IMG/VR virus record: IMGVR_UViG_3300042892_005961
Coordinates: 1 to 64,000 of that record
DNA length: 64,000 nucleotides
Direction: 5' to 3' (one strand)
Under the pieces are notes generated by a model. The model was not told the DNA's origin. It searched no databases and worked only from the letters and a program-made list of their open reading frames with translations. Each line of letters begins with the position of its first letter. Position 1 is the stretch's first letter. The position numbers and the translations under genes are program-made. Positions 1,211 through 43,649 of the stretch are shown here, piece after piece.

Positions 1211-1546
1211 TTAAACTTCTGGTATCCATCTTAAAAAGGTTATGCGAAGTGGTGTTCCTCCTAATATATTAAAAGGCCATGGGTCATGATCGTTATCTAT
1301 TGTCATCGTTATGTTATCTCCCGTTATGGATAATATAGGTACTATCATTTGTTCAGGAAAGTTCATTAAAAAAGTTCTAATACTTGTGGTGGTCATTACT
1401 TCTTCCACCCAATTTGGTTCTCTATCTAAATAGTCTCTTCCTGTCCACATCCAACTTGCAAACCCATCATGAAGATCGTGAACAAACCCTCCGAATTCTA
1501 ATTCATTAGTCTCATTATCGGTTAAGAATTTGAAGTTTCTAATCAT
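1211..1546 (-). CDS. hypothetical protein, N-terminal FKFL motif
   Basis: 111-aa ORF starting MIRNFKFLTDNE. Confidence 0.65.
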   Translation of the reverse strand: MIRNFKFLTDNETNELEFGGFVHDLHDGFASWMWTGRDYLDREPNWVEEVMTTTSIRTFLMNFPEQMIVPILSITGDNITMTIDNDHDPWPFNILGGTPLRITFLRWIPEV

Positions 1547-1821
1547 AAATCAATATTAACTAAAAATCTTTCGGTTATGTATCCTGGATTTCTTGGTACC
1601 CAACAAACAACAGAATGATAATTATTTTCTCTTTGTTGAACGTAAAGAACTCTCCAAGTTCCTTGAGTATGTGGGTATTCTTTTGGGAATACTGTTGTTT
1701 CCCATTCATCAGTACTAATTAAACTTTCAAGAATATATTTTGCATTGTCATAACAACAATTAGGACTAAATCTCATTGTTGTTTTTTCATTGTCACTAAA
1801 AAATTTGAACTCACTTACCAT
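1543..1821 (-). CDS. hypothetical protein, N-terminal FKFF motif
   Basis: 92-aa ORF starting MVSEFKFFSDNE; 4-nt overlap with the next gene. Confidence 0.65.
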   Translation of the reverse strand: MVSEFKFFSDNEKTTMRFSPNCCYDNAKYILESLISTDEWETTVFPKEYPHTQGTWRVLYVQQRENNYHSVVCWVPRNPGYITERFLVNIDL

Positions 1822-2258
1822 ATACTTAATATTTTAGCAATTCCAATGATTGTAACGATTGTTGTAAGTGCACTAACAAATACAACACCAATCGGTTCTG
1901 CTCTCCAAGTTTCAATTAAAACCAATTTAACTCTAGTTCCAAATATCTTGACTTTAGTCCATAACGTTGGGTTCAACGTTATGGTTGTTGTTGCTTGAAA
2001 TAATCTAATTCGTTCATCGGTTTCTCTTGAGTGATTTATCATTCCTAATCTTCTTATTCTTTCTTGTTCAATCAACATATCTCTATTTCTCATGTATTGT
2101 TCATGTGATATATTTTGAAAATGTTCAGCATAATATCTTTCCATTTCATTATTGGAATCTAATCTTGGGTAATATAACGATGCTGTCGCATATGTTTCTC
2201 CGTCCATTATATCTAATGTTCCAATATAACCTCTGAAAAAATTGAATTTACTTTTCAT
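1815..2258 (-). CDS. hypothetical membrane protein, N-terminal FNFF motif
   Basis: Starts MKSKFNFFRG; C-terminal hydrophobic helix. Confidence 0.65.
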   Translation of the reverse strand: MKSKFNFFRGYIGTLDIMDGETYATASLYYPRLDSNNEMERYYAEHFQNISHEQYMRNRDMLIEQERIRRLGMINHSRETDERIRLFQATTTITLNPTLWTKVKIFGTRVKLVLIETWRAEPIGVVFVSALTTIVTIIGIAKILSIW

Positions 2259-3207
2259 TATTTAAAATATAAGATTTGTTTTTAAAAATTTCTCTAAACT
2301 CGTTATCAAATGATACTTCATAAATAACTTTATTATTATTATCCACCCTAACGTGTGTTATTTCATTGAATTGATCTAAAATTCTTGTAGTCCAAAATCC
2401 TGATTTTGTAATTATCTTAACTACCTTTTCTTTATTTATTATTACAGTAATTTCCTCCGACTTTACCAATTCTAAAGCGTTGTAAAAAATATTTAATGTT
2501 CCATCTTCAGGATTATAATACAACGTAAAATGTAAACCTCTATGTTCGTTTATATTACCTTTTATAAATCTATCTTTTGGTGGTTCGTTTTTAAATAAGA
2601 CATTACCCGACTCGATTAATATTTTTTTAGTTAAAAATTCCAAATGTGTTTGGTCTAACTTCCTCATCTCAGAGTCAATAAAATCTCTATCGTAATTTTT
2701 AAATTTATCAGGTAACGATTTAACTCTAAACGATTTAAATGAACCATATAACCATCCGTTTTTATCGCCGGTATCTGTACTAATTACTGAATCATATTCT
2801 TTTAGACTTTCTATATTTTCAAAAATTAAATTTTCATCTAACAATTCACAATCGTACTCAATATGATGTACGTTTTCATAACCAAAATTTGTAGCAATTT
2901 GACTAGCCATCGAGAACATTCTGTATATTGCAAATCCGTAAAATTTTTTATTAAAAAATCTTGATTGTATTCGTCTATCACCAAAATGAAATGTAAAATG
3001 TCCCAATAAATTGTGGTCTCCACTAACATCGTTATTGTAATCATAGAAATAATAATTACATTTTTTTTGAATGTGGAATGGTATATGTGAATGTGATAAT
3101 AATGCGATATGAAGTCCACACTTCATAACGGAATTTATACAACGTTCCAAGAGTTCTTCTTGTTTTTGAGTTTCACAATAAGCGGTAATAAAAATTAAAT
3201 CTTTCAT
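2248..3207 (-). CDS. hypothetical glycosylation-associated protein
   Basis: 319 aa; resembles the N-terminal domain of 53714..55843 (YYFYDYNND vs YYLYDGNND; HHIEYD vs HFLEYD). Confidence 0.55.
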   Translation of the reverse strand: MKDLIFITAYCETQKQEELLERCINSVMKCGLHIALLSHSHIPFHIQKKCNYYFYDYNNDVSGDHNLLGHFTFHFGDRRIQSRFFNKKFYGFAIYRMFSMASQIATNFGYENVHHIEYDCELLDENLIFENIESLKEYDSVISTDTGDKNGWLYGSFKSFRVKSLPDKFKNYDRDFIDSEMRKLDQTHLEFLTKKILIESGNVLFKNEPPKDRFIKGNINEHRGLHFTLYYNPEDGTLNIFYNALELVKSEEITVIINKEKVVKIITKSGFWTTRILDQFNEITHVRVDNNNKVIYEVSFDNEFREIFKNKSYILNNEK

Positions 3208-3803
3208 TAAAATTCTTTGAATAAATCGTTTTTTGTTAAATCAGGATAATCCTCAACTGTGTCTTCATTATGTTTTGGTAATGATGACATCAACCATAAT
3301 CCGTCAGCCGCATCTGGTGGTGTCATATACATATTCCAACCTAAAAACTTAATGTTATCTTGGGTATATGGTATTTCATCTCTCCCCTCGTGTCTTGCCC
3401 TTTTAAACCATTTATACGCGTCTTCATTATCTGTCAATATCATTCCACCTTTTCTCATTTGTAATATTTTTTTAGGGTGAAAAGAAAGACACATAAAACT
3501 ATTTGGTATGTACATACCACTTGTGAATCGTCTTGCTGAATCGTATATCTTATACGGTTTTAATTCATAAACACCCTTCCATTCAGTATCATCAAACTTT
3601 ACTTTACCTCCTGAAGACATAATTGCTTGCGGAACGGAAAGATAAGTTTTTTTAGGAATAGTTACTTCGGTTACTTTTGAATAAACGCAACAAAGAAATA
3701 ATGCGTCAGTACAATTATCTAATGCAATTGCGTAAGGGGATCCAGTATATTCCGCAATCTCCTCCTCAAACATTTCAACTATTTTATATGGATTGTGTTT
3801 CAT
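3207..3803 (-). CDS. short DegT/DnrJ/EryC1/StrS-family PLP aminotransferase
   Basis: FEEEIAEY-GSPYAIALDNCTDAL, DSA, SFHPKK (PLP lysine), GGMILTD; only 198 aa. Confidence 0.8.
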   Translation of the reverse strand: MKHNPYKIVEMFEEEIAEYTGSPYAIALDNCTDALFLCCVYSKVTEVTIPKKTYLSVPQAIMSSGGKVKFDDTEWKGVYELKPYKIYDSARRFTSGMYIPNSFMCLSFHPKKILQMRKGGMILTDNEDAYKWFKRARHEGRDEIPYTQDNIKFLGWNMYMTPPDAADGLWLMSSLPKHNEDTVEDYPDLTKNDLFKEF

Positions 3804-4437
3804 ATTGATAATTTATTATTTTACAGGGGCTACCATAGGCAACCACATTATTTGGAATGTCTTTAGTGACTAATGAACCAGCACCTATTACTGTATTATC
3901 TCCTATTGTAATTCCGTCAATTATATTTGCCCCAATACCTATTTGACATCCTCTACCTATGGTTACATTACCGGCAATATTAGTACCTGGATTTATCGAG
4001 GTAAAGTCTCCAATAGTTGTGTGATGACCGATTGATACGTGTCGATTTATTGTAACAAAATTGCCTATTGTTGTGTGAGCAGCGATCGATACTTTTGGGT
4101 TAATTAATATTCCATATCCAAGTGTACTTGTATGTGAAATATCTAATCCTTTGTGAATAACATTAATGAATTTATTTTTATTAGGGTTCAATGTTTCTAA
4201 AATTTTAATTTTATGTTTAGGTTGATAAACCCCTAAAACGTAGGAATCGTAATCATCAATGTTGATCTCATTTAAAACCTCAATATTAAATTTATTGTGG
4301 TCAAATGAATTTAATATTGGTAAATTTAAATTATTATACACAACAATACCTTTTAAATTAAGTGTTGAATAAAGATTGTCTAATATCATTGTAATGATAT
4401 TGTCTCCCTTACCTAATACTAATATTTTTGTTTCCAT
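3784..4437 (-). CDS. NeuD/PglD-family sugar acetyltransferase
   Basis: Hexapeptide repeats, IGAGSLVTKDIP, YGSPCKII. Confidence 0.9.
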   Translation of the reverse strand: METKILVLGKGDNIITMILDNLYSTLNLKGIVVYNNLNLPILNSFDHNKFNIEVLNEINIDDYDSYVLGVYQPKHKIKILETLNPNKNKFINVIHKGLDISHTSTLGYGILINPKVSIAAHTTIGNFVTINRHVSIGHHTTIGDFTSINPGTNIAGNVTIGRGCQIGIGANIIDGITIGDNTVIGAGSLVTKDIPNNVVAYGSPCKIINYQYETQSI

Positions 4438-5236
4438 ATCCTAAATCTCTTAGTTCTTTTGATGATAAAATTTCCAATTCCATTTCATTCATAATGTTAT
4501 GAATTATTTTTAATAATTGTATATTGGTCGCTTTCTCCTTATCTTTATAATATAAATTATCTTCCAACCCAACCCTAACACCATCCGCTTCAAGTAACCC
4601 ATAAACATTACTCCTCAATTGTTGTGAACCAATACCGCCGAAACATACTTTTGCGTTATTAGGTAATGAAGATTTAATGGATGCAATTGTGTAAATATCA
4701 GATTGTGAATTGTATATGTTCCCCAATATCACATTAATGTAGTGTGGTTCTTTCAATATATTTTTTGATATTAAATAATTTGTGTAGTTAATCATTCCAG
4801 AATCAAAACATTCAATTTCAGGATTAACTCCATACTTTTCCATTTCATTAATTAATGATAAAATCATATTTGGTTCATTAACTGACGCACCTGTTGGGAA
4901 GTTTAACGATGACATCGTTAATGATCCCATATCGGGACGTAATTGTAGAACTTCAGTTCTCTTCTCTAACTCAGGAAAGTTTCTACCGGTTAATGAAACA
5001 CAAATTAATAATTCAGGACAATGTTTTTTTATTCCTTCAATAATTTGAGAGTAAACCTCTTTCTTATATGTATTCTTTAATGTTTCTTCATCTCTTGCAT
5101 GTAAATGAACTATAGATATACCTAATTCATTTGCTTCATGAACCTCTTCAATTATCTCATTTGGTAATAATGGAGCATAAGAATTTTCACGAGTAGTTTG
5201 AGTACCTGTTGGTGTGAAATTAATTATTTTTTTCAT
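4409..5236 (-). CDS. beta-keto acid cleavage enzyme (BKACE/Kce, DUF849)
   Basis: TPTG start, VHLHAR metal motif, PDMGSL, PEIECFD, VRVGLEDNLY. Confidence 0.9.
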   Translation of the reverse strand: MKKIINFTPTGTQTTRENSYAPLLPNEIIEEVHEANELGISIVHLHARDEETLKNTYKKEVYSQIIEGIKKHCPELLICVSLTGRNFPELEKRTEVLQLRPDMGSLTMSSLNFPTGASVNEPNMILSLINEMEKYGVNPEIECFDSGMINYTNYLISKNILKEPHYINVILGNIYNSQSDIYTIASIKSSLPNNAKVCFGGIGSQQLRSNVYGLLEADGVRVGLEDNLYYKDKEKATNIQLLKIIHNIMNEMELEILSSKELRDLGYGNKNISIR

Positions 5237-5605
5237 TTAGTATAATTTAAAACTACTACTTGAATAAGTTGCCGTTCCTGTTGTTAAAGTATTAAGTGTT
5301 CCTGTTGTTGTATATGTTGTTCCGTTAGTATTTGATGTTGTTAAACTATATCCCGTTGCGGTATTGATTGTACCGTTGTAAGGTATTGTATAAGTTCCTG
5401 TGCCAGGTGTTGTGGTTATAGTATAGTTTGGTGGGGTATAGGTTATTAGTCCTGGATTTACAACCCATGTTGGAGTGTATGTTATTCCGCCCCAATTTGG
5501 AGTAATAATAGTGTTGATATTATTCAATCTGTTGATTGCATCCCAATCAATATCCAATAATGGATGTTCTTCTTGGTACCCGTGGAAAAATACAAATCTT
5601 TTCAT
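5237..5605 (-). CDS. hypothetical protein, N-terminal FVFF motif with Thr-rich tail
   Basis: Starts MKRFVFFHG; Thr/Gly-rich low-complexity C-terminal half. Confidence 0.65.
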   Translation of the reverse strand: MKRFVFFHGYQEEHPLLDIDWDAINRLNNINTIITPNWGGITYTPTWVVNPGLITYTPPNYTITTTPGTGTYTIPYNGTINTATGYSLTTSNTNGTTYTTTGTLNTLTTGTATYSSSSFKLY

Positions 5606-5765: not shown

Positions 5766-6347
5766 TCAAATCAATTTTTTACTTGACACGTTCCGTAATT
5801 TTTTAGCTGCGGGATCAATAATATTTAATATGTCGATATATCTTAAACTATTGATTTCCAAATAATTAACTAATTTTTGGATGTCCTTTTTTGTTTCAAA
5901 TATATCTTCATAGGTAACTTGCAAACCATTAATAACATTTAAAATTTCTATTTTTGATTTATTAAGATACTCCTCATTTAAACGAAATTCAGATTCATTT
6001 AAATTTAACCAATCTGTTGTTATGATATTATATTGTTCATATTTATCTTTCCTAATAAATGTCTGTAAACTAATTGCACATTCTTTAATATCATTTCTTG
6101 TTAAACATATTATCTTATCAAATGTATTAAGATATTCCTCATAGTCCAAACCAAATTCTTTAATTGATTCCGGTATTTCCTCAATTAAAACATTGTCACC
6201 ATTTAATGCACGTTCAGCGTTATGTCTATTAAATGGGTTGTCTTCACCTAAAGGTTCGTGATAATGATGAAGTTGTAATTCCGATGCTATCCATTGTGAT
6301 AAAACAAAACCACCCGCTCTTCTATGTTTAAGTATTAATATTCTCAT
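5766..6347 (-). CDS. sulfotransferase-like (P-loop) protein
   Basis: ILKHRRAGG 5'-PSB-like start, LTRN, VTYEDIF; ends KKLI. Confidence 0.6.
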   Translation of the reverse strand: MRILILKHRRAGGFVLSQWIASELQLHHYHEPLGEDNPFNRHNAERALNGDNVLIEEIPESIKEFGLDYEEYLNTFDKIICLTRNDIKECAISLQTFIRKDKYEQYNIITTDWLNLNESEFRLNEEYLNKSKIEILNVINGLQVTYEDIFETKKDIQKLVNYLEINSLRYIDILNIIDPAAKKLRNVSSKKLI

Positions 6348-7125
6348 ATTTTAAAATGTATTCGTAAAATAGTTCTGCCTGTACTTTATGTCCTTTCTCA
6401 CCTAAATGAGTGTCATCTTCAACTACATGGTTTGTTTCCATATATATGGTTTCACCACCTTTAAACATAATCATAGACATAAAGTCACCCCCATGATATT
6501 CCTTAACATACTGACGTGGTGTTATTACATTATGTAATATATATTTCTTTTGGTTGTATTTTTCAGGAGGTAATGAATATATTATATCATTGTCAGTAGA
6601 CCAAAAATAAATTTCAAATCCTCTCGCATCGGCATACTGTTCAATTATGTTCTCATAATTGTAAATCTCATCAATATATAAACTGGTTGATCTGTTAACA
6701 ACTATTTCCTCCTTGGTTGATTTAGAGATATAATTAAAATCGTCAGGATTACCATTATGTGAACTTAACTTTCTCCAAGTGTGTAATGGATTACCTTCTT
6801 TATCTTTATGTGCCCATGATCCGTCAGCGTGTTTTATTAAACATGACCATCTAAACCTATCCCTATATGCCCAATTTACAAACACGATGTCTCCTTTCTT
6901 AAAAGTGTGAGCATTTTCACAAACATCCTGAAATATTTGAACGTTTGAATTACCACCGACTCCGTGGTTGATTGTTTCCATTCCTAACTTTTCACCTAAT
7001 ATATCTACCCAACACGGTGGTAGATTTCCACCTCTTAATTCCCTCCATTGAATAAACGGTGGGTAGGTACATTCGTATGGTTGTCCTTCGGTATAACTAT
7101 CCCCAAATGCATGTATTGTATTCAT
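6328..7125 (-). CDS. SGNH/GDSL-like hydrolase/acyltransferase
   Basis: FGDSYT, GVGGNSN, DTHLGEKGH. Confidence 0.7.
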   Translation of the reverse strand: MNTIHAFGDSYTEGQPYECTYPPFIQWRELRGGNLPPCWVDILGEKLGMETINHGVGGNSNVQIFQDVCENAHTFKKGDIVFVNWAYRDRFRWSCLIKHADGSWAHKDKEGNPLHTWRKLSSHNGNPDDFNYISKSTKEEIVVNRSTSLYIDEIYNYENIIEQYADARGFEIYFWSTDNDIIYSLPPEKYNQKKYILHNVITPRQYVKEYHGGDFMSMIMFKGGETIYMETNHVVEDDTHLGEKGHKVQAELFYEYILKYENINT

Positions 7126-7126
7126 T

Positions 7127-7777
7127 TTAATCCGGTATTAAATCTATAAAGTTAATATAAGTGTATCTATTCCAATTTTCAACTTTAGATACCTCATGTC
7201 TTAAATTATTATTTGTAAAATCTAAAATTGTATATGTTGTATATTTTGGTTCAACAATAACTTTAATACCATGTGAATCTTCAATTGTTAAACTACCTCC
7301 GATAGCATCTTCAGGTATTTCTTTATTAAGATAAATTAAAACAACACATATTCTGTTTTTAGAATCTTTATCATTATCCACGTGTGAGTCTATAAAACAA
7401 CCATCGTTGAACATGGTATATTCATCGTTGTAAATTAATTTACTATCGTCCTTTAAATCATATAAGTCTTTAATTAATTCAAAAGATAATTTCCTAAGAT
7501 TATCACTTACCGGTATGTCAACACTAAACCATTTTTGGAATACTCCAAAAACATTTTCGTCAGTTTCTTTAACGTATTTATCATACGTTAAACTTTGTTC
7601 ATAAGTGCAACTTTTAGTAAAATGTAATTTAATTAAATCTTTTCCTGCGATGTCATATCTACAAGATAAATTGTTTGTATCTTTTGATTTTTCAATTACT
7701 AAATCAATATCATCTTTAATGATACTATCATAATCAAATGAACCAATTAGATATCCGTTATTAAATAATGTATTCAT
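7127..7777 (-). CDS. 2OG-Fe(II) oxygenase
   Basis: HVD...VLIYLN...GGSL...HEV...R. Confidence 0.8.
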   Translation of the reverse strand: MNTLFNNGYLIGSFDYDSIIKDDIDLVIEKSKDTNNLSCRYDIAGKDLIKLHFTKSCTYEQSLTYDKYVKETDENVFGVFQKWFSVDIPVSDNLRKLSFELIKDLYDLKDDSKLIYNDEYTMFNDGCFIDSHVDNDKDSKNRICVVLIYLNKEIPEDAIGGSLTIEDSHGIKVIVEPKYTTYTILDFTNNNLRHEVSKVENWNRYTYINFIDLIPD

Positions 7778-8544
7778 TAAATATTTTTTATAATATAGTT
7801 ATAAAACAAATCACATTGAACCTGATGACCCGTTACACCATAATGCCAATCTCTGACTTTTTCATTTGTTTCTTCCATTATTGTTTTAGCACCTTCTTCT
7901 TTAAATAAACTCATATAATCTCTTTCACCTAAAATATCTGATAATAAATACTTTTTATCATTTTTGATTTCTTTATTCTTATAATTTACAATATTATTAT
8001 CTACTGTCCAATAAAATATATTAAATCCTGTATTATCAGCAAATTGATTTAATAGTTTCTGTTGAATAAATAATTCATTGATCCATAATGGATTTGTTCT
8101 ATTAACAAATATATTCTCCGCTGTATTATTATCGATGTAATCTGGATAATCGGGTATACTAGTACCAGGGACCAACGCGGGATAAACAGATATCATTGAT
8201 TTACCTGTTTCGTTCGCCCATTTAAACCTTTCAATATACGTCCATTCAACAATAACAATGTCTCCTTTCTTAAACTGATTACAATAATAAGCGATGTTGT
8301 TTAATATCGATTGATTACAATTACCTTCCCCAAAATTATTAATCGTGTTTTTATAACCCCCATTACCTGAATAATTTTTAATATCAAATCCTAACTTTTT
8401 AGATAACATCGTTGGCCATGAATCTGGAGCAACACCATTAAAGTATTGTTCAATATAATCAACTCTTGTATTGGGTGATGTTCTTGGTAGTAGAACACTA
8501 AATTCCTCACTAAAACTACAACCAAATGTAAATAATGTGTTCAT
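7777..8544 (-). CDS. SGNH/GDSL-like protein
   Basis: FGCSFS, DWHYGVTGH; ends LFYNYIIKNI. Confidence 0.7.
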   Translation of the reverse strand: MNTLFTFGCSFSEEFSVLLPRTSPNTRVDYIEQYFNGVAPDSWPTMLSKKLGFDIKNYSGNGGYKNTINNFGEGNCNQSILNNIAYYCNQFKKGDIVIVEWTYIERFKWANETGKSMISVYPALVPGTSIPDYPDYIDNNTAENIFVNRTNPLWINELFIQQKLLNQFADNTGFNIFYWTVDNNIVNYKNKEIKNDKKYLLSDILGERDYMSLFKEEGAKTIMEETNEKVRDWHYGVTGHQVQCDLFYNYIIKNI

Positions 8545-8547: not shown

Positions 8548-9321
8548 TTAAATATTTTTTATAATATAATTATAAAATAATTCAAATTGAACTCTATGTC
8601 CACTTTCTCCTAAATGTGTGTCGGTACAATTTCCATTTGTTTCTTCTTTAACTATTAACCCACCATATTTTCTAATGGTTTTAAAAAAAGTACCTCCCAC
8701 ATCATCAAAAAATAAAGGATCTCTTTCAATGATTAAATCATTAATTATATATTTTTTTTGGTGTAATTTTTCGGGTGGTAAAGTATAGATAATGTCACTA
8801 TCACCAGACCAATAAAAAACATTAAATCCAATCGATTTAGATAATTGGTCAATTATTTTTTCATAATTATAAATTTCTTCAACATATAAAATTGAAGATC
8901 TGTTTTCAATAATATCTATTTTTGTTTGTTTTTTTATATCTTCACTATTATCGGAAGCGATGGATATTCTTATCCAATCAGGAATATTATATAAACCTTC
9001 TAGCTCTCTATTTCTTAATACCGCCCATCTAAATCTGTTTAAAACAGCCCAATTAATTATTACAATATCTCCATTTTTAAATTGGTCACAATTTTTACAT
9101 ATTGTTTCAAATATTTCTTGATTTGAATTACCTCCATGTCCATAATTCACAACATCCATATTAAGTTTTTTACCTAATAAATCAATCCATATTGGAGGTA
9201 AATTACCTCCCCTATATTCTTTCCATTGTTGATATGGTTTGAATGTCTTATCTTGAAAATGTCCGGCGGTAAAACTATCACCAAATCCAAATAATGTTGC
9301 CATAAATTTATTATTTAACAA
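8548..9321 (-). CDS. SGNH/GDSL-like protein (start probably MATLF)
   Basis: FGDSFT, GHGGNSN, DTHLGESGH; same last 10 aa as the neighbouring paralogue. Confidence 0.7.
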   Translation of the reverse strand: MLNNKFMATLFGFGDSFTAGHFQDKTFKPYQQWKEYRGGNLPPIWIDLLGKKLNMDVVNYGHGGNSNQEIFETICKNCDQFKNGDIVIINWAVLNRFRWAVLRNRELEGLYNIPDWIRISIASDNSEDIKKQTKIDIIENRSSILYVEEIYNYEKIIDQLSKSIGFNVFYWSGDSDIIYTLPPEKLHQKKYIINDLIIERDPLFFDDVGGTFFKTIRKYGGLIVKEETNGNCTDTHLGESGHRVQFELFYNYIIKNI

Positions 9322-12922: not shown

Positions 12923-13964
12923 GGGGTGTTCTAATTTCAGTTCTTGATGACCATTGCATTCTATCAATTGTACTTTCGGGTTGTTCGGGTTGATACGATA
13001 TTGTTGGTCCCTCTTCCTCCGTTTCATCACCTCTCTCATCGTAAAATGGTAATTCAGGTTGTTCCATTACTGATTCTTCTATTGGTTCACTTACTTCAAT
13101 CTCTTCTTGTGCTCTTCTTACTGCCGATGCTACTCTCTCACTAATTGCAGCCTTTCTTCCACTTACCAACTCTTTCTTTTTTTGATCTCCACTCAACATT
13201 GCCGTGTTTGATTTAACCTTTGGATCTTTAACATAATCACGAATAAAACCAATTAATTCTAACGGTAAATTAGAATCAGTTGAATCAATACGAGTATCTT
13301 TTTGATTCCAATATGAAAATTCAGGTTCGTTTTTATCTAATGAATAAAATGCGGCAACCTTATAACCAGTCTTCTTATTGATACAATAAACTAACACACC
13401 TCTCTTAGCATATTTGTTATAGTATTCTTGATTGTGTTCTGTTGTTGTGCACCATTTAGTATTTGCACCATACTTACAAGATGATTTGAATGTTAAAGGT
13501 CTAATTAATAACCACTCAGCATCTTCATGTATTTTAATAACTTGTGTTTCTAATTCTTTCTCTTCTGATTTCATTTCAGCAACTCCCATTGCCGCAATCA
13601 TCTGTTCAAATGATTTGTATTTTGTTAAATCATTTTCTTCAATTAAATTTCTTTCGTTGTATTCACAGAACTTTCTATACTTCTGTAAATCTTCTGTATT
13701 AAAAAATCCATCAATAAATTTATATAATAACATCATTTGGATATCACTCATCAAGTCTAACTTACTTTTTTCTATAAATGGAAACTTATCAACTAAGAAC
13801 AATTTAATTTCTTTGGTGTGTTCTTTTAGATTTGGTGTGTTCTTCATCATACGAAGTAATGTCTCCGTATATTTTGATTTACCTTCAGGACTAAACATTT
13901 CTAAAATAGAAACAATGTTTAAGTTGTGATCTTCATTAGTTCTTAAGTCTTTAATTCTCGACAT
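12909..13964 (-). CDS. hypothetical phage protein (PcfJ-like domain, acidic tail)
   Basis: WLLIRPLT..SSCKYGANTKWCTT motif. Confidence 0.55.
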   Translation of the reverse strand: MSRIKDLRTNEDHNLNIVSILEMFSPEGKSKYTETLLRMMKNTPNLKEHTKEIKLFLVDKFPFIEKSKLDLMSDIQMMLLYKFIDGFFNTEDLQKYRKFCEYNERNLIEENDLTKYKSFEQMIAAMGVAEMKSEEKELETQVIKIHEDAEWLLIRPLTFKSSCKYGANTKWCTTTEHNQEYYNKYAKRGVLVYCINKKTGYKVAAFYSLDKNEPEFSYWNQKDTRIDSTDSNLPLELIGFIRDYVKDPKVKSNTAMLSGDQKKKELVSGRKAAISERVASAVRRAQEEIEVSEPIEESVMEQPELPFYDERGDETEEEGPTISYQPEQPESTIDRMQWSSRTEIRTPRERS

Positions 13965-15532: not shown

Positions 15533-15562
15533 TAAAAAAACCCCAAAGTATTTTTTGGGGTT
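15533..15562 (-). terminator. rho-independent terminator
   Basis: aaccccaaa/tttggggtt stem followed by a U-run on the minus strand. Confidence 0.7.
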
Positions 15563-15588
15563 CTAAATGTGTGTAAAATGTGTATAAC

Positions 15589-17173: not shown

Positions 17174-17440
17174 TTAAAACGGCATTTCTTCCCCGTTTTC
17201 GTCATAGTGGATTGGATCAACGTGATTGGCCCTTACTTCCTCACACTCTCTTAGATATTCTTGGTATTCAAGGTCTTCTTCTTTTTTGTAATCAAAGGTT
17301 CTAACAACCCAATCATACCATTCCATTTGATTAAAATGATCGGCTACCTGTTCTAAATCCCATATCTTTTCATACCCCCATTTATGAAGGTACTCTTGTA
17401 GAGTAAGTTTACCTGCAAAAAATTTGAAGTCACTATTCAT
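17174..17440 (-). CDS. hypothetical protein, N-terminal FKFF motif
   Basis: Starts MNSDFKFFAG. Confidence 0.65.
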   Translation of the reverse strand: MNSDFKFFAGKLTLQEYLHKWGYEKIWDLEQVADHFNQMEWYDWVVRTFDYKKEEDLEYQEYLRECEEVRANHVDPIHYDENGEEMPF

Positions 17441-21180: not shown

Positions 21181-21769
21181 GTCTTTTCTTCATATCGTTT
21201 ATCACCTTTCTTAAATCATAAGGTGCAAAGTCTGGATTACCATCCACACCAACGTCCATTCTACGACCATTACCATACTTTTTATGATTAGGTAAGTGAA
21301 CGTGTCCGTGAAGATGAATACGTCCCTTATTCAGTCCGTTCCATGATGCAATTGGAAAGTGCATACACTCTATCGTCTCTCCCAAATAATTCAATTGTAA
21401 GAACCATTGGGTTGATGCAAATAAACTTTGTATATTATCTTTGTTATTGACTTGGAAATGATCGTGATTACCAAAAATTAAATGAATTTCTTGCACTATC
21501 AATCTATTTCTAAATTCCTCTATCTTCTCAAATCCACCGAATGACCAATCACCAAAATGTATCAACACATCGTCCTGACCAACGACCTCGTTGATGTTAT
21601 TCACAATTGATGCATTCATCTTATCCAATGTTTCAAATGGGCGTGTTTGTTTCTCTGGTACATCACCATTAGGCAATCTCCAATTAGTTATTCCACGACA
21701 TATGTTTGTGTGTGAATAGTGTGTGTCCGAAGTCACCCATACTTTTCTATCGTTATCAATCTTTAACAT
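21116..21769 (-). CDS. calcineurin-like metallophosphoesterase
   Basis: SDTH, HFGD, GNHD, HFP, HGHVH, DVGVD. Confidence 0.9.
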   Translation of the reverse strand: MLKIDNDRKVWVTSDTHYSHTNICRGITNWRLPNGDVPEKQTRPFETLDKMNASIVNNINEVVGQDDVLIHFGDWSFGGFEKIEEFRNRLIVQEIHLIFGNHDHFQVNNKDNIQSLFASTQWFLQLNYLGETIECMHFPIASWNGLNKGRIHLHGHVHLPNHKKYGNGRRMDVGVDGNPDFAPYDLRKVINDMKKRPIGSELGVEDHHVDELKNVVG

Positions 21770-22169
21770 TACTCCTCAAAAATTTGAAGTCTTTTAATTT
21801 ATTTTTATCTATTCTTTCTATTGCCGACCTAACTGCTTCATCTCTCTCTGATTGTGCTTGGGCAATTCGTGATATTGGTGGTGGAGGTGGAATGGACCTA
21901 CCAAAACTTGTCATTCGTTGTCTATTAATTTCTGACATTGTTCTAAACCATCCTCTATGTCTATCATTACTCTCCTGTTCCATTACCCCATAATATTTCT
22001 TCTTCTCTTCAACATCCTTTCCCACTATTAAAGCTAATATTGGTCCTAACAATATTGCACCTATTACCATATCCAAACCTAATGTGTAATGTTTATTATG
22101 ATAATACATCACATATACCGATGAGGTTGTCCAAACCAATATTAGAAAAATTAATAGTAATGTATTCAT
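21756..22169 (-). CDS. membrane protein with C-terminal FKFL motif
   Basis: Two TM helices, poly-Pro, ends KDFKFLRSNVKD; ATG at 22169 follows a promoter. Confidence 0.6.
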   Translation of the reverse strand: MNTLLLIFLILVWTTSSVYVMYYHNKHYTLGLDMVIGAILLGPILALIVGKDVEEKKKYYGVMEQESNDRHRGWFRTMSEINRQRMTSFGRSIPPPPPISRIAQAQSERDEAVRSAIERIDKNKLKDFKFLRSNVKD

Positions 22170-28962: not shown

Positions 28963-29646
28963 TTACTTGTTAAATTTACAAAAATTACGTTTAAACTCCT
29001 TTTCGTACACTTTTAATTCCTTTGTGTTTAACCCATTATATAGTCCTGTGGACATAAATGCTTGGATTTCATCATCAATAATTTTCTTATCATCAACATA
29101 TCCCATCTTAATAAGTTTCTTTTTTAACTTATTATAATGAGTTAATTTAATGTTACCAATCAGTTCATTTACCTTTTTCTTATAATCTTTGTTGGTAAAA
29201 TATAGTCCGTGAGCAATTTCGTGATTCATAGTTCCTTTATCTTTAGAACTTGCACCAATCAAATACCAATCACATCTTGTTCCGTTATTTTTATTTTGTG
29301 AATCAATTGCACAATAAAAATAAATGTCATTCATTATCACATCATACTCGGTTTCTTTATAAAACGCATCCACCCCTCCGTCCAATATATTTGATGGGAT
29401 ATTATATCCAGCCCAATCATCAGGATATGTAAATGTTCTTTTCTTCCACATATCTTTGTAATGTCTCATATATTCCATCCAAGTAAAACGTTTACCTCTA
29501 AACTTTTTATATGGTGATTCATAATATTCTTGATAACGACAGAATAACATTGCACGATCATAATCATCATCAATTTGGGCACAATATATTTGTGGAACAA
29601 TCTCTTTAACCACACCTTTAACTAAAGGATGTTTAATTTTTTTCAT
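28963..29646 (-). CDS. hypothetical protein with HExxH motif
   Basis: MLFCRYQEYYESP, HEIAHG, DEIQAF. Confidence 0.6.
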   Translation of the reverse strand: MKKIKHPLVKGVVKEIVPQIYCAQIDDDYDRAMLFCRYQEYYESPYKKFRGKRFTWMEYMRHYKDMWKKRTFTYPDDWAGYNIPSNILDGGVDAFYKETEYDVIMNDIYFYCAIDSQNKNNGTRCDWYLIGASSKDKGTMNHEIAHGLYFTNKDYKKKVNELIGNIKLTHYNKLKKKLIKMGYVDDKKIIDDEIQAFMSTGLYNGLNTKELKVYEKEFKRNFCKFNK

Positions 29647-30394
29647 ATATTAAATCTATTATTCTTTGAGCAACTATTTTATTACCCTCAATACCTAAAT
29701 GTTCATCTTTAGATAGTCCCTTTGTTTCATGTTTAATTAATATTTCATGTTTATTCATCCAATTACATAATGCGTCTTTATCGAACCAAATAAAATTAAA
29801 ATCGTCATTTGATAAATTATGATTCTTAAGATACATCTGAAAGTCTCCACTATCAATAATCAAATAGTCTAATCCTAATAATTTAATATAGGAAACTAAA
29901 CCAAAAAAAGTGGACATCATTTTATTTTTTTCAAAATCATCTTCAACAAAATTATAAAAATAATTTGTTAAATCTTTATAAATTCTTGGTAAATCTTCTC
30001 TTGGATTACCATTAGCAAAATCCGTAATATCTGTGTATGAATGTATACTTGATATCGTTAAGTTAATGGTTCTTTTTAATTCATTTGAATATAATTCATC
30101 TCTCCAATATGGTGGTATTTCTAATATAAAAAACGTACCTTCTAAATTGTCTTTATTTTCATACAGATATTCATAGGTTGTTCTAACCAGTCTATTAGAA
30201 GACCCTCCTGGTACTGAGTTATTTACTACATCAACACCTAATTCTTTACCAATTACATTAGGGTAAGCATAATCTAAATGATTAACTATTTCAATACCTA
30301 AATTTGCTTTGTATATTTCCTTAACATCCTCCCAATGTAATCCACCTGCATAAGTGAAACTACAACCATTTGCAAAAATTTTATTTATTTTCAT
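29633..30394 (-). CDS. SGNH/GDSL-like protein
   Basis: NGCSFT, GGSSNR, DEHLGIEGN. Confidence 0.7.
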   Translation of the reverse strand: MKINKIFANGCSFTYAGGLHWEDVKEIYKANLGIEIVNHLDYAYPNVIGKELGVDVVNNSVPGGSSNRLVRTTYEYLYENKDNLEGTFFILEIPPYWRDELYSNELKRTINLTISSIHSYTDITDFANGNPREDLPRIYKDLTNYFYNFVEDDFEKNKMMSTFFGLVSYIKLLGLDYLIIDSGDFQMYLKNHNLSNDDFNFIWFDKDALCNWMNKHEILIKHETKGLSKDEHLGIEGNKIVAQRIIDLIYEKN

Positions 30395-36276: not shown

Positions 36277-36314
36277 AAAACCCTGACAACTAACAACTAA
36301 CGTCAGGGTTTTTT
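36277..36314. terminator. bidirectional rho-independent terminator
   Basis: aaaaccctgac...gtcagggtttt between convergent genes. Confidence 0.75.
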
Positions 36315-36945
36315 ATATTATTTTCTTATAATTACCATTTATTTTACTTAATAAAATTTCAGATAACTGTTTTTGTCCCTTTTCACTAAAATGTGCGTCT
36401 TTTATAACACCATTGGTTTCGTTTGTAATTTGTTCAATATCCTTAACAAAAATACCATCTATTTTACCTTGATTAAATGTTGACCAATTAATAACTTTAA
36501 AATTTTTTACGGTTTTTTTAATAAAATTAATCCATATATTGATCTCACTAATATAAACATCAGATAACCTATTAACACATAATTCCATTATTGTTTGATT
36601 ACTAATGTTTTCCATATCTGTATAATTATTTTCATGATTTGGAACAAAAGAATTCCATGAGTTATTTTTAGTTGCTAATCTAAATCTACCAATATCAGAC
36701 CAACCTATTATTACAATATCTCCGTCTTTGATGTTATCTATGTTTTTAATAAATGATTCAAATATTGTGTTATTATCTGATCCACCCTTACCTAAATTAA
36801 TTAGATTGTAATTTAATTTTTTAGATATAATTTCACCATATGTTAATGGAATGTAACCTTTCCATTCAACATATTTTTTCGCCCATATGTTATCAGATCT
36901 AAATCCATCGGTTAAACTATCTCCAAATGTCCATACTGTATTCAT
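36313..36945 (-). CDS. SGNH/GDSL-like protein
   Basis: FGDSLT, GKGGSDN, DAHFSEKGQ; ends KKII. Confidence 0.7.
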   Translation of the reverse strand: MNTVWTFGDSLTDGFRSDNIWAKKYVEWKGYIPLTYGEIISKKLNYNLINLGKGGSDNNTIFESFIKNIDNIKDGDIVIIGWSDIGRFRLATKNNSWNSFVPNHENNYTDMENISNQTIMELCVNRLSDVYISEINIWINFIKKTVKNFKVINWSTFNQGKIDGIFVKDIEQITNETNGVIKDAHFSEKGQKQLSEILLSKINGNYKKII

Positions 36946-39323: not shown

Positions 39324-39998
39324 TTATATTATATTTTTTAATTGTAGGTTTATAAATTCTTCAAATATTTGTTTGTGTTCTTCCGATCCATAATGTCCGT
39401 TACCCGGTATTCCTTTGATATTATTATCATTTATAAAATTATTAACCGACCCTTTTAGTATATTCATTTTATCTAATATATTACCATATCCTATTTCATT
39501 TGCAAGTGATTGTAAATCAATGTACCAACTAAAAATAATCAACTTTACACCATAAAAATTACATATATATTGAATTGACATTAAAGTATGGAATATTTTA
39601 TATTTTTGATTCAAATCTGAAGTTAGTACATGTTTTTTAAAGAAATCATGTATGTGATAGTCCTTTTTAAAATGATTTTTAAGTTCGTTGTCGTCGTTTG
39701 ATAACCTAATTGTGTAATGTCTCAAATCACCTAATTCTTTATCTCTACTATCCCATTCATAATCAACATTATCAATACCAAAATCAAATCTAGATGGGTC
39801 GGTAAGCTGTAAAATAAAGGTTTTCATATCAGGATAACGATTTATTAACATTTTAACCTTCTCAATGTTGATTTCATTACCTGAACCTGAGGAGGCTCCA
39901 AATTTAATATCTGCACCGTATTCTTGACCTAAATAATAATGCCACGGGTGTCCGTAAGTGTCAGAAGAATGGGAACAACCCTGAACACCTATTTTCAT
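39324..39998 (-). CDS. SGNH/GDSL-like protein
   Basis: QGCSHS, GSGNE, GHYGSEEH; ends KNII. Confidence 0.65.
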   Translation of the reverse strand: MKIGVQGCSHSSDTYGHPWHYYLGQEYGADIKFGASSGSGNEINIEKVKMLINRYPDMKTFILQLTDPSRFDFGIDNVDYEWDSRDKELGDLRHYTIRLSNDDNELKNHFKKDYHIHDFFKKHVLTSDLNQKYKIFHTLMSIQYICNFYGVKLIIFSWYIDLQSLANEIGYGNILDKMNILKGSVNNFINDNNIKGIPGNGHYGSEEHKQIFEEFINLQLKNII

Positions 39999-41913: not shown

Positions 41914-43175
41914 TGAAACCAACAATATTATTTAGAGGACCAGTTAAAACAAGAAGTGGTTATGGTTCACACTCAAGAGATTTATTAGAGGCACTATATC
42001 AAATGAATATATTTGATATTAAAATTGATAGTTGTATGTGGGGGAATACTCCCATGACTGCTTTGGAACCGGATAATACATTTCATAAATGGATTGAAAG
42101 TAATATCGTTTATAAATTTGACGGTCTACCTGATATCTATATACAAGTAACGGTACCTAATGAATTTAAAAGATTTGGTAAATTTAATATAGGTATCACC
42201 GCAGGAATTGAAACAACTGTTGCACCTAAAGATTGGATTGATGGTTGTAATCAAATGGATTTAATAATTACAACATCTAATTTTTCTAAAGATGTTTTAT
42301 TATCTACAGTTTATGATGAAAGAAATAAAACAACAAATGAATTAACTAATCAACATAAGATAACAAAACCAATTGAAGTGTTATTTGAAGGTGTTGATAC
42401 ATCAATCTTTAATGATGTAATCAATAAAGATTTTAAATTAGATATTAAAGAAAACTTCGCATTTTTATTTGTTGGTCATTGGTTAAAGGGAAACATAGGT
42501 CAAGACAGGAAAGACATTGGTATGTTGATTAAATGTTTTGTTGAGGCATTTAAGGATGGTAATGATATGCCGGCGTTGGTATTAAAAACATCATCATCAA
42601 GTTTTTCAATTAAAGAAAGAGAAGTTTTTACTAAAAGAATAAAAGATATTGTTTCTGATATTAAAAATCCTCCGTCAATTTATTTATTATTTGGTGATTT
42701 AAGTAATAAAGAAATGAATGATCTATATAACCATCCAAAAATTAAACTAATGGTTTCACTAACTAAAGGTGAGGGATTTGGTAGACCTTTATTAGAATTT
42801 ACAATGACTGGTAAACCTGTAATGGCTTCCAATTGGTCGGGTCATAAAGATTTTTTATCTGTTGATAAATCAATTATGATTGGTGGTAAATTAACAGATG
42901 TTGACGATAGTGCAATTGATCAGTTTATTATTAAAGGATCTAAATGGTTTACCGCAAATTATGGTGAAGTTGCTGAAATTATGAAAATAGCTAGAAACGA
43001 TTATAGTAATTTCTTACTAAAATCTTTAAAACTTAAAGAAGAGAATAAACAAAACTTTTCTTTAGAAAAAATGAAAGAACGTTTTGAGGAGATATTAAAA
43101 CCATATTCAATTGCGTTTCAACCTCCTCCACAACAAACCAAATTAATTTTACCTAAATTAAATAAAGTTAAATAA
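41913..43175 (+). CDS. GT4 (GT-B) glycosyltransferase
   Basis: SGYGSHSR, DRKDI, GEGFGRPLLEF, WSGHKDF. Confidence 0.88.
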   Translation: MKPTILFRGPVKTRSGYGSHSRDLLEALYQMNIFDIKIDSCMWGNTPMTALEPDNTFHKWIESNIVYKFDGLPDIYIQVTVPNEFKRFGKFNIGITAGIETTVAPKDWIDGCNQMDLIITTSNFSKDVLLSTVYDERNKTTNELTNQHKITKPIEVLFEGVDTSIFNDVINKDFKLDIKENFAFLFVGHWLKGNIGQDRKDIGMLIKCFVEAFKDGNDMPALVLKTSSSSFSIKEREVFTKRIKDIVSDIKNPPSIYLLFGDLSNKEMNDLYNHPKIKLMVSLTKGEGFGRPLLEFTMTGKPVMASNWSGHKDFLSVDKSIMIGGKLTDVDDSAIDQFIIKGSKWFTANYGEVAEIMKIARNDYSNFLLKSLKLKEENKQNFSLEKMKERFEEILKPYSIAFQPPPQQTKLILPKLNKVK

Positions 43176-43405
43176 TGAACTTCAAATTTTTTAAAGGTGA
43201 TGAAACACCTACATTATGTTTTACACCTCATAGATATGAACCAGAAAATGCTGAATTTTGTTTTCAATTTGGTGATGAAGAACCCGTTGTTTTCGCTTCG
43301 GGTCCAAATGATTGTAGTATTCGTTTAAGTCCAACGAGTAATACTGAAATGACGTTTAATGATAATGGTAGAGTATTTAAATTATTCGCAAGAGAAAGAC
43401 AATAA
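43175..43405 (+). CDS. hypothetical protein, N-terminal FKFF motif
   Basis: Starts MNFKFFKG. Confidence 0.65.
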   Translation: MNFKFFKGDETPTLCFTPHRYEPENAEFCFQFGDEEPVVFASGPNDCSIRLSPTSNTEMTFNDNGRVFKLFARERQ

Positions 43406-43406
43406 T

Positions 43407-43649
43407 ATGGGAGTTAGAGAGTTTAGATTTTTTCACGGGATCACAATTCAATCGGAAGGTATTCAAAATATCGTTAGAACACTACGTGCTCAATGGAGAC
43501 CTGAGTTGGTTGATGATTTAAATACTGTTTACTCAATTGATGCTGAGGCAGAATTAACAAGATTAATGTCGGAACAAATTGTGGAAGAAATTGACAACGA
43601 AGTAATAAATATATTAACGGGAAGAATAAACGGAGGACAAAGAGCATAA
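43407..43649 (+). CDS. FRFF-motif miniprotein containing a T4-like major capsid protein fragment
   Basis: MGVREFRFFHG then RTLRAQWRPELVDDLNTVYSIDAEAELTRLMSEQIVEEIDNEVI, recognisably gp23-like. Confidence 0.7.
   Translation: MGVREFRFFHGITIQSEGIQNIVRTLRAQWRPELVDDLNTVYSIDAEAELTRLMSEQIVEEIDNEVINILTGRINGGQRA

What the first reader, a model, noticed from the sequence alone, without database searches (positions are those of the whole stretch)
1211..43649. Unrelated small proteins share an N-terminal F-[KRNV]-F-[FL] motif
Seen at N-termini: MIRNFKFLTD (1546), MVSEFKFFSD (1821), MKSKFNFFRG (2258), MKRFVFFHG (5605), MNSDFKFFAG (17440), MNFKFFKG (43175), MGVREFRFFHG (43407). One C-terminal copy: KDFKFLRS (21756). 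The rest of each protein differs (TM helix, Thr-rich tail, capsid fragment, acidic domain), and they occur in tandem runs. Inference: a modular short linear motif that docks diverse cargo to one hub protein or membrane. Less likely, a shared 5' nucleotide element (ttcaaatt) or a recombination cassette that generates new genes.
Basis: seen in the sequence. Interest (0 to 1): 0.7.

Follow-up and report, generated by a model that had tools for sequence, protein, structure and literature searches.

The report
Shared FKFF address tag on phage proteins
A group of very large lake-water phages puts the same four-residue tag (Phe-Lys-Phe-Phe/Leu) at the very start of dozens of otherwise unrelated small proteins, most likely to send them all to one partner or place in the infected cell; no such tag has been described.

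Summary
All seven N-terminal copies and the one C-terminal copy are at the stated places. The window is the edge of a 211-kb, 63%-complete contig of a T4-like jumbo phage from lake water. A complete 335-kb relative has about 24 tagged genes, 20 of them in one tandem array. There FKF and FKFF are the most N-terminally enriched words of the proteome (p about 1e-17).

I collected 133 distinct tagged proteins from about 18 related contigs. They fall into 38 body families with almost no detectable relation to each other. The constraint is on the protein:
- synonymous codons vary;
- upstream DNA is not conserved;
- every copy near a start codon is in frame;
- orthologues keep F-K-F while their flanks change.

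AlphaFold places the tag outside the confidently folded domain. A membrane protein keeps the same motif at its C-terminus in 18 orthologues.

Best reading: a modular terminal docking tag. The receptor is unknown. The closest analogue is T4's capsid-targeting sequence, but the T4-type cleavage site is absent. A membrane-targeting peptide remains a live rival. Nothing comparable turned up in the literature searches.

The parts
1211..1546 (-). Tagged gene, 111 aa, MIRNFKFLTDN... The F-K-F-L codons are 1523-1534. An acidic linker follows, then a beta-rich domain.
   Evidence: In 33 orthologues I2, F5, K6, F7 and N11 are invariant while the linker varies and has indels. In the AF2 model the tag is a low-confidence strand (residues 4-8), the linker to residue 28 is low-confidence, and the domain (29-107) has pLDDT 79-85.
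1543..1821 (-). Tagged gene, 92 aa, MVSEFKFFSDN... The F-K-F-F codons are 1798-1809. Its stop overlaps the start of the next gene (ATGA).
   Evidence: In 26 homologues F7 is invariant and F5 and K6 nearly so, with variable flanks. In the AF2 model residues 1-21 have pLDDT below 50 and the fold spans 22-92.
1815..2258 (-). Tagged gene, 147 aa, MKSKFNFFRGY... The F-N-F-F codons are 2235-2246. It has a C-terminal transmembrane helix, so it is tail-anchored.
   Evidence: Fourteen homologues down to 35% identity keep F-[KNV]-F-F.
5237..5605 (-). Tagged gene, 122 aa, MKRFVFFHGY... The F-V-F-F codons are 5585-5596. It has a Thr/Gly/Tyr-rich low-complexity tail.
   Evidence: Orthologues carry FVFF, FIFF or FKFF. 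In relatives it lies directly upstream of the 2258 orthologue (joint 2252>5231).
17174..17440 (-). Tagged gene, 88 aa, MNSDFKFFAGK... The F-K-F-F codons are 17417-17428. The body is acidic. This is a strain-specific ORFan next to a helicase gene.
   Evidence: No orthologue in IMG/VR and no atlas hit.
43175..43405 (+). Tagged gene, 76 aa, MNFKFFKGDE... The F-K-F-F codons are 43181-43192.
   Evidence: The orthologue in G001 at 303169-303399 has the same tag.
43407..43649 (+). Tagged gene, 80 aa, MGVREFRFFHG... The F-R-F-F codons are 43422-43433. The tag is fused to a fragment of a T4-type major capsid protein (strand plus long helix region).
   Evidence: Pfam Gp23 positions 135-194, E 4.8e-12. 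Residues 14-70 are 49% identical to residues 349-405 of G001's capsid protein, E 1e-16. The tag lies outside the homology. The gene is conserved in G001.
21756..22169 (-). Membrane protein, 137 aa from the ATG at 22169, with two N-terminal TM helices and a C-terminal copy of the motif: ...NKLKDFKFLRSNVKD*. The F-K-F-L codons are 21777-21788.
   Evidence: K-D-F-K-F-[FL] lies within the last 2-8 residues in all 18 orthologues, down to 43% identity, while the residues before and after it change.

Best explanation
The motif is a protein-level, terminally exposed address tag. Its form is Met, 1-5 residues (usually I/V, K/R, P/D/E), then F-K-F-[F/L], then three polar residues (often x-G).

A clade of roughly 335-kb T4-like jumbo phages from lake water has grafted it onto at least 36 unrelated small accessory proteins of 68-190 aa, about 6% of the genes of a complete genome. 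Most of these lie in one tandem array, of which this window holds only the edge.

Shown: the tag is selected as amino acids, it sits on a flexible stretch outside the folded body, and it is portable between unrelated bodies.

Inferred: it works as a common handle by which one receptor recognises all these proteins. My favoured receptor, at about 0.3, is the prohead core or shell, by analogy with the capsid-targeting sequence of T4 internal proteins. The tagged proteins would then be packaged and injected as a changeable arsenal. The membrane proteins carrying the same tag at a cytoplasmic end would tie the assembling prohead to the membrane. A host protein (chaperone, protease adaptor or other hub) is an equally open receptor.
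For: Positional enrichment is far beyond an AT-rich null.

Modularity:
- 133 distinct tagged proteins fall into 38 body clusters, and only 2 of 703 profile pairs are related.
- One body is a piece of the capsid protein, whose own sequence has no tag at that place.

The constraint is on the protein, not the DNA:
- Phe is written TTT or TTC, Lys AAA or AAG, and Leu with both TTR and CTN codons; DNA upstream of the ATG carries about 0.1-0.2 bit per base.
- Within 14 orthologue clusters the two Phe codons vary in 7 and 9 clusters, whereas flanking positions change residue in 11-14. The unchanging Phe residue is partly by selection, because these clusters hold only motif-bearing proteins; the unbiased check is.
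- All 17 DNA copies near a start codon in G001 are in frame 0, at spacings of 1-5 whole codons, and there is no enrichment upstream of starts.

Retention in homologues: 136 of 151 body homologues keep the strict motif. The rest are cut by contig ends, start with GTG, or carry FKLL, FRMF or YKFF. The only true exception is the real capsid protein.

The hydrophobic core is bracketed by polar positions on both sides. It is unstructured or low-confidence in the AF2 models of two families.

The same motif is conserved at the cytoplasmic C-terminus of a membrane protein in 18 orthologues. It also ends a second, unrelated membrane protein in five genomes.

The complete relative has the T4 head machinery: an S77 prohead protease, an acidic scaffold-like protein and gp23. 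In T4, diverse internal proteins share only a 10-19-residue N-terminal capsid-targeting sequence (PMC3012670, PMC9026906).
Against: No receptor was identified.

Against the T4-type reading specifically:
- The L/I-x-E cleavage site that ends a T4 capsid-targeting sequence is not enriched after the tag (14% of proteins against 26% of control windows) and is not conserved in any family.
- The proteins are not basic as a class: median pI 6.3 against 5.7 for all small proteins.
- Three tagged families are membrane proteins, which cannot themselves be packaged.
- No tagged gene lies in the head module.

The composition of the tag (aromatic plus basic, at a terminus, followed by a flexible linker) also fits a membrane-binding peptide.

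The body families may still share an origin too old to detect, because the alignments are shallow.
Confidence: 0.55

Rival explanations
1. Membrane-targeting peptide. The tag is a short amphipathic, aromatic-plus-basic segment that sticks the proteins to the inner face of the cytoplasmic membrane. Terminal peptides of MinD, FtsA, MreB, SepF and Noc do this (those examples are from memory).
For: The tag can sit at either terminus. Its composition is Phe plus Lys/Arg. It is followed by polar, often acidic, low-confidence linkers. The helical hydrophobic moment of the first 10 residues is 0.42 against 0.30 for other N-termini of the same genome.
Against: The hydrophobic core is only four residues, often between Pro and Gly, which is short for a membrane helix.

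The first Phe is never replaced by Leu, Ile, Val, Met or Trp in about 150 homologues; one Tyr is the only variant. That is stricter than simple partitioning into lipid would demand.

Three families already have transmembrane helices. 21% of ordinary N-termini reach the same moment.
Confidence: 0.2
2. Remnant of common ancestry. All tagged genes are paralogues of one fast-evolving family, and the motif is merely the best-kept piece (for example a first beta-strand) of a shared fold.
For: The genes sit in tandem arrays, which grow by duplication. A few clusters join at low stringency. Two of 703 profile pairs reach about 90% probability. In one AF2 model the tag is a strand.
Against: 701 of 703 profile pairs show nothing.

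The bodies include a capsid-protein fragment, a Thr-rich low-complexity tail and a tail-anchored membrane protein.

The tag lies outside the confident fold in both models, which have different secondary-structure orders.

The same motif also sits at C-termini of unrelated membrane proteins. Even if this reading is true, it does not explain why only these four residues are kept.
Confidence: 0.1
3. Nucleic-acid element. The conserved thing is the DNA or RNA TTYAAATTTTTT near start codons, acting as a translation-initiation enhancer, a regulatory site, or a microhomology that drives cassette exchange.
For: Five of the seven window copies share TTCAAATT. TTC at the first Phe (44% against 20% genome-wide) and GGG at the Gly (45% against 7%) are over-used.

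Arrays differ between genomes gene by gene, with junctions at gene starts. The C-terminal copy lies 6-10 nt upstream of the next gene's ATG in most orthologues.
Against: Wobble positions vary freely, and Leu uses both codon families. All 17 near-start copies are in frame 0 at whole-codon spacings, and only one genuine copy lies upstream of a start. Upstream DNA is not conserved. Twelve bases with wobble variation are too little for ordinary homologous recombination.
Confidence: 0.05
4. Chance in an AT-rich genome. Phe and Lys codons are common, so FKFF-like words recur.
For: The genome is 31% G+C. One look-alike in the window, MKFQFY, is indeed chance.
Against: Expected 0.5 against 6-7 observed in this contig. 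p is about 1e-17 in the complete relative. Control patterns give 0 hits. The motif is conserved in orthologues.
Confidence: 0.01

Closest known systems
Capsid-targeting sequence (CTS) of phage T4 internal proteins IPI, IPII, IPIII and Alt
   Same: It is a short N-terminal peptide and the only thing shared by otherwise diverse small proteins of a T4-type phage. It is portable to foreign proteins. The gene set differs between related phages (PMC3012670, PMC9026906). The relative G001 has the same head machinery: S77 protease, scaffold-like protein and gp23.
   Different: - No L/I-x-E cleavage site follows the tag.
- The proteins are not basic as a class.
- There are about 24 genes per genome instead of a handful.
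- The motif also occurs at C-termini of membrane proteins.
- The sequence is unlike the T4 CTS as I recall it.
- Packaging has not been tested.
Terminal membrane-targeting peptides of bacterial cytoskeletal and division proteins (MinD, FtsA, MreB, SepF, Noc; from memory)
   Same: They lie at a terminus, have aromatic-plus-basic composition, and are followed by a flexible linker and then a globular body. They can be N- or C-terminal.
   Different: Those are amphipathic helices of 9 or more residues with loose sequence requirements. Here a four-residue core is kept almost letter for letter across unrelated proteins, and it also sits on proteins that already span the membrane.
Cargo-loading peptides of encapsulins, and N-terminal packing signals of contractile injection systems (PVC/eCIS; from memory)
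   Same: Short, disordered terminal peptides address unrelated cargo to the inside of an HK97-fold shell or a phage-tail-like tube.
   Different: The sequences and position differ (encapsulin peptides are mostly C-terminal). No shell-binding evidence was obtained here.
Mobile promoter/stem-loop cassettes (PeSL) of T4-type hyperplastic regions (from memory)
   Same: They are found in variable accessory regions where small ORFan genes come and go one at a time.
   Different: Those are conserved intergenic DNA elements. Here the intergenic and upstream DNA is not conserved, and the repeat is inside the reading frame, selected as protein.

Membership tests
T4-type capsid-targeting sequence / internal proteins | An N-terminal peptide of 20 residues or fewer shared by otherwise unrelated small phage proteins | tested here: met
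   38 body clusters share only M-x(1-5)-F-K-F-[FL].
T4-type capsid-targeting sequence / internal proteins | The phage has a gp21-type (S77) prohead protease, a scaffolding core and a gp23 shell | tested here: met
   In the complete relative G001, PF03420 matches at 123018-123485 (E 5e-21) and PF07068 at 125175-126695 (E 2e-63), with an acidic 420-aa protein between them. The window's own contig is incomplete and lacks this module.
T4-type capsid-targeting sequence / internal proteins | The tag ends in a protease site L/I-x-E and is removed | tested here: not met
   [LI]-x-E within 24 residues occurs in 19 of 133 proteins (14%) against 26% of control windows. It is conserved in no family. The specificity of this phage's protease is unknown.
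T4-type capsid-targeting sequence / internal proteins | Small basic proteins | tested here: not met
   Median pI is 6.3 (quartiles 4.9-9.0), like other small proteins of the genome.
T4-type capsid-targeting sequence / internal proteins | Present inside virions and injected | not testable with these tools
   There is no isolate and no virion proteome. The complex prediction gave no answer.
Membrane-targeting amphipathic peptide | A terminal segment with a high helical hydrophobic moment | tested here: inconclusive
   Mean moment is 0.42 against 0.30 for control N-termini, and 21% of controls reach it.
Membrane-targeting amphipathic peptide | Binds lipid bilayers | not testable with these tools
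   This needs liposome or localisation assays.
Single paralogous protein family (shared fold) | Sequence or profile similarity beyond the motif | tested here: not met
   Only 2 of 703 hhalign pairs exceed 80% probability. There are no Pfam or PHROG families. The two AF2 models have different secondary-structure orders, with the tag outside the confident core.
Conserved regulatory DNA cassette (promoter, stem-loop or translation element) | Nucleotide conservation independent of reading frame, including upstream of the start | tested here: not met
   Upstream information content is about 0.1-0.2 bit per base. All 17 copies near starts are in frame, and there is no upstream enrichment.
Sliding-clamp binding motif of T4-type replication and transcription proteins | A gp45-type clamp is present, and the polymerase or late factors carry the same terminal motif | tested here: not met
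   PF09116 has no match in G000 or G001. No large protein ends in the motif. Other clamp types were not searched.
Secretion signal peptide or lipoprotein signal | A hydrophobic stretch of about 10 or more residues after a basic N-terminus | tested here: not met
   Only four hydrophobic residues are present, followed by 82-100% polar positions.

The most novel reading that the evidence does not exclude
The FKFF tag is a previously unknown phage address system. One receptor, phage- or host-encoded, reads a four-residue terminal motif on about two dozen interchangeable effector proteins and on dedicated membrane anchors. The phage can therefore create a new addressed effector simply by placing any coding fragment, even a piece of its own capsid gene, behind the tag. 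If the address is the prohead, this would be a far larger and cleavage-independent counterpart of the T4 capsid-targeting system. It would also be a ready-made marker for finding injected proteins in uncultured jumbo phages.
Probability: 0.4. Interest if true: 0.85.

Novelty: new variant of a known kind. Interest (0 to 1): 0.72.

Why it matters
Most genes of jumbo phages are small ORFans with no handle for study. Here a four-residue terminal tag groups about 6% of a genome, at least 36 unrelated families, into one functional class and predicts a single shared receptor. That makes the class directly testable with tag-reporter fusions, pull-downs and virion proteomics.

If the tag directs packaging or localisation, three things follow:
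- It would extend the T4 capsid-targeting idea to an abundant, uncultured freshwater lineage.
- It would give a sequence rule for finding delivered or co-localised effectors in metagenomes.
- It would offer a very short portable tag for loading cargo.

It also shows how a phage can mint new addressed genes by fusing arbitrary fragments behind a fixed start.

Tried and rejected
- Complex prediction (capsid protein + 141-aa head-module protein + the 1821 protein): no answer, so it is evidence neither for nor against binding.
- Fold searches of both AF2 models against PDB and AlphaFold DB clusters: nothing below E 0.04, all TM-scores under 0.5.
- Pfam and PHROGs on 17 tagged proteins and on their untagged neighbours: no family, apart from the capsid fragment.
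- Protein atlas look-alikes: none usable.
- Megablast and tblastn against named phages: no close relative.
- The nearest named or deposited phages by capsid protein are LR756508, LR756511, Flavobacterium phage immuto and Microcystis phage Mel-JY01. None shows the tag above the control pattern.
- T4 late-promoter word TATAAATA: enriched in intergenic DNA, but not upstream of head genes or of the array, so gene timing could not be read from it.
- Sliding-clamp idea: no gp45-type clamp, and no polymerase with the motif.
- A C-terminal ...KLFNF[YH]KSKK on the 141-aa protein beside the prohead protease looked like a lead. Its fourth position differs, and the orthologues are too similar (77% or more) for the conservation to mean anything.
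- A family of roughly 280-aa proteins next to the arrays has tag-like internal hairpins, but shows no profile relation to the tagged families.
- Literature: no paper holds 'FKFF' together with 'phage'. A 2025 paper on large aquatic Bacteroidota phages ('moraphages') could not be tied to this clade.
- Metatranscriptome contigs cover only short pieces of relatives' tag genes. This is weak evidence of transcription.


Full report
**What the window is.** The 64-kb window is the first part of a 211,168-bp IMG/VR virus record (31% G+C, CheckV completeness 63%).
- Its genes are phage-like and tightly packed. The rest of the contig holds large genes whose size and N-terminal sequences look like myovirus tail parts (my reading of the gene list; no family search was run on them).
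- A complete 335,630-bp relative (G001) carries a T4-type head module: portal, S77 prohead protease, an acidic scaffold-like protein and a gp23 capsid protein.
- The capsid protein has thousands of close relatives in metagenomes.
- The window itself is held by 20 lake-water or freshwater DNA runs from 2020 to 2025.
- The nearest named phages are distant, at 45% or less over half of the capsid protein. They include a Flavobacterium phage.
- A relative encodes a protein that starts with a lipoprotein-type signal sequence, MKKTLYFILFLLIISCKKE. A Bacteroidota host is therefore likely but not shown.

**The observation.**
- In my gene call of the contig, 6-7 genes carry F-x-F-[FL] within about ten residues of the start, against 0.53 expected from the same proteins' interiors.
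- BLAST among the seven proteins finds only the first 15-18 residues.
- Pfam and PHROGs recognise none of them, except that the 43407 protein contains a piece of gp23.

**The window shows only the edge of something larger.** Searching viral contigs with the 2258 protein gave ten related loci.
- These hold long tandem runs of 70-190-aa genes that all begin M-[IV]-[KR]-x-F-K-F-[FL].
- The complete relative has about 24 such genes out of 399, with 20 between 3.3 and 17.5 kb.
- The window's contig ends exactly where that array continues in its relatives.
- In G001 an unbiased count of all 3- and 4-residue words ranks FKF and FKFF as the most N-terminally enriched words (p about 1e-17). They rank ahead of the catalytic block of a true paralogous family, the SGNH hydrolases.
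- Of 29 F-[KRN]-F-[FL] words in G001's proteome, 21 are at N-termini, 2 at C-termini and 6 internal.
- A scan of 2.9 million viral contigs for DNA encoding MIKPFKFF found 14 stretches in 13 contigs; 12 of these have about 30-34% G+C and 11 of them carry several tagged genes or are known relatives.
- The nearest deposited huge phages and named phages lack the tag.

**Are the bodies really unrelated?** I collected 133 distinct tagged proteins from about 18 contigs.
- With the tag removed they form 38 clusters (BLAST 1e-5, at least 50% coverage).
- Only 2 of 703 cluster pairs reach 80% probability by profile comparison.
- The bodies include a tail-anchored membrane protein, a Thr-rich low-complexity tail and acidic domains.
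- In the 43407 family the body is a capsid-protein fragment: residues 14-70 are 49% identical to residues 349-405 of G001's capsid protein, which has no tag at that place.
- A second family may contain the capsid protein's N-arm region, but that match is below threshold.
- The alignments are shallow, so very old common ancestry of some families cannot be excluded.

**Protein or nucleic acid?**
- Across the first 89 tagged ORFs collected, the first Phe is TTT 56% and TTC 44%.
- Lys is AAA 80% and AAG 20% of the Lys codons, as genome-wide.
- Leu at the fourth place uses TTA, TTG, CTA, CTC, CTT and CTG.
- The 30 bases before the tag's first codon, which include the 5' leader, carry almost no information apart from the ATG.
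- Within 14 orthologue clusters the two Phe codons vary in 7 and 9 clusters, and positions on either side change residue in 11-14 clusters. Those clusters hold only motif-bearing proteins, so the unchanging Phe there is partly by selection.
- To avoid selecting on the motif, I searched with bodies alone. Of 151 distinct homologues, 136 keep the strict motif. The others are cut by contig ends, start at GTG, or carry FKLL, FRMF or YKFF. The only true exception is the capsid protein itself.
- In independent database homologues of two window proteins, F-K-F is invariant or nearly so, while residues 2-4 and the following linker vary and carry indels.
- All 17 DNA copies near a start in G001 are in frame 0, at spacings of whole codons, and the word is not enriched upstream of starts.
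- A chance look-alike in the window, MKFQFY, is lost in its orthologues.

The constraint is on the peptide.

**Anatomy of the tag.** The four-residue hydrophobic core is bracketed by polar positions: 84-97% polar at -2 and -1, and 82-100% at +4 to +6. AlphaFold models built on orthologue alignments agree:
- In the 1821 protein, residues 1-21 have pLDDT below 50, ahead of a helix plus four-strand domain.
- In the 1546 protein, the tag is a low-confidence strand, followed by a low-confidence acidic linker and then a confident domain.

The two models differ in secondary-structure order, and neither matches a known fold.

**The C-terminal copies.**
- The window's membrane protein (21756-22169) has two N-terminal TM helices. 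In all 18 orthologues, down to 43% identity, K-D-F-K-F-[FL] lies 2-8 residues from the C-terminus. What precedes and follows it changes...NKLKDFKFLRSNVKD...NNKKDFKFFH...NLKDFKFFRG.
- A second, unrelated membrane protein in five relatives ends ...KLTFKFFRG.
- By the positive-inside rule, which I judged by eye, both tails are cytoplasmic, as is the N-terminus of the tail-anchored 2258 family.
- The motif therefore works at either terminus and on the cytoplasmic side.

**Mechanism.**
- Shown: this is a portable, terminally exposed, protein-level motif under strong purifying selection on unrelated bodies.
- Inferred: it is a common handle read by one receptor.

The closest known system is T4's capsid-targeting sequence. 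This is a 10-19-residue N-terminal peptide, the only feature shared by the diverse internal proteins. It brings them into the prohead core and works on foreign proteins (PMC3012670, PMC9026906). The clade has the matching head machinery. T4 proheads assemble on the membrane (PMC9026906), which would give the tagged membrane proteins a role.

Two defining T4 features are not met: no L/I-x-E site follows the tag, and the proteins are not basic. I therefore put capsid targeting at about 0.3, within an overall 0.55 for 'docks to a common protein receptor'.

A membrane-binding peptide is the main rival, at 0.2. The composition, terminal position and linker fit, and the helical moment is somewhat raised. 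Against it, the core is very short, its first Phe is never exchanged for another hydrophobic residue, and three families already span the membrane.

**How the tag spread.**
- Arrays differ between genomes gene by gene.
- One tagged gene has no orthologue at all.
- One tagged body is a captured capsid fragment.
- In this window a 3-kb sugar-gene block sits between two tagged genes that are adjacent in relatives.

This fits new genes arising by placing sequence behind an existing start-plus-tag.

**Novelty.** The full-text search found no paper holding 'FKFF' together with 'phage'. Nothing comparable turned up in the related searches. I rate it a new variant of a known kind, namely terminal address tags on diverse phage proteins. 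There is a fair chance that it is a new address system altogether.

Noticed in passing
window 6328-7125, 7777-8544, 8548-9303, 29633-30394, 36313-36945, 39324-39998, 60533-61162 (more beyond the window): A large expansion of SGNH/GDSL-type hydrolase paralogues, identified by their N-terminal sequence block, not by a family search. All start with ...F(G/T)FG(D/C)S(F/Y)... Their N-terminal block (GCS, FGDS, GCSF) is the most enriched N-terminal word in this contig, above FKFF.
   Followed up: partly
window 43407-43649; G001 302958-303137: A small conserved gene made of the tag plus a roughly 57-residue piece of a T4-type major capsid protein (strand plus long helix). It is only about 50% identical to the phage group's own capsid protein, so it is not a recent copy.
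   Followed up: yes
L012 (G001) 12980-13453 and homologues in L029, L034, L035, L040: A tagged family whose body resembles the conserved N-arm segment of gp23 (...RRGAGRTIAQDLVPVQPLG...). From memory, this is the region that in T4 forms the Gol peptide, which binds EF-Tu. The match is below threshold: Pfam E 0.001, BLAST E 0.33.
   Followed up: partly
window 2248-5236: Four sugar-modification-type genes lie between two tagged genes (5605 and 2258) that are adjacent in relatives. A metatranscriptome contig of a relative joins 2252 directly to 5231. This looks like an inserted cassette.
   Followed up: partly
window 216-1061; G001 4515-5357, 15550-16395, 18951-19784, 19784-, 21498-, 21952-22311: A second paralogous family of roughly 280-aa two-module proteins sits in and beside the tag arrays. 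Each module starts with a tag-like hairpin (LIFKTFKKGKV, LIYKGLKKGGK, TIFKALKKGKI). There is no profile relation to the tagged families.
   Followed up: partly
window 1076-1198: A 40-aa, very basic ORF (MSSKFFNNPQQSKIDKGVKKPATTKPVK...) is conserved in G001 at 4378-4500. There it lies 9 nt downstream of TATAAATA.
   Followed up: no
G001 whole genome: By my count, the T4 late-promoter word TATAAATA is about 24 times denser in intergenic than in coding DNA. Yet only 19 copies lie within 150 nt upstream of a same-strand gene, and none before the head genes. The minus-strand bookkeeping of the first count was rough.
   Followed up: partly
contig 97-104 kb (outside the window): A run of fibre-like genes have similar N-termini (MPLITNSN.., MPLDLNGN.., MPINVGGN.., MATLIGTT.., MATLQNTT..). 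This suggests paralogous tail-fibre or spike proteins.
   Followed up: no
window position 1 (contig end): The record is classed as a provirus and 63% complete. Its left end falls inside the accessory region where relatives continue with the main tag array. The low count of tagged genes in this window therefore reflects where the contig ends.
   Followed up: yes
L018 (G001) 2449-2874: A 141-aa protein between the portal region and the prohead protease (the place of T4 gp68, from memory) ends ...K(K/N)LF(N/V)F(Y/H/N)K(S/T)KK in about 50 orthologues. This resembles the tag but has a different fourth residue.
   Followed up: partly
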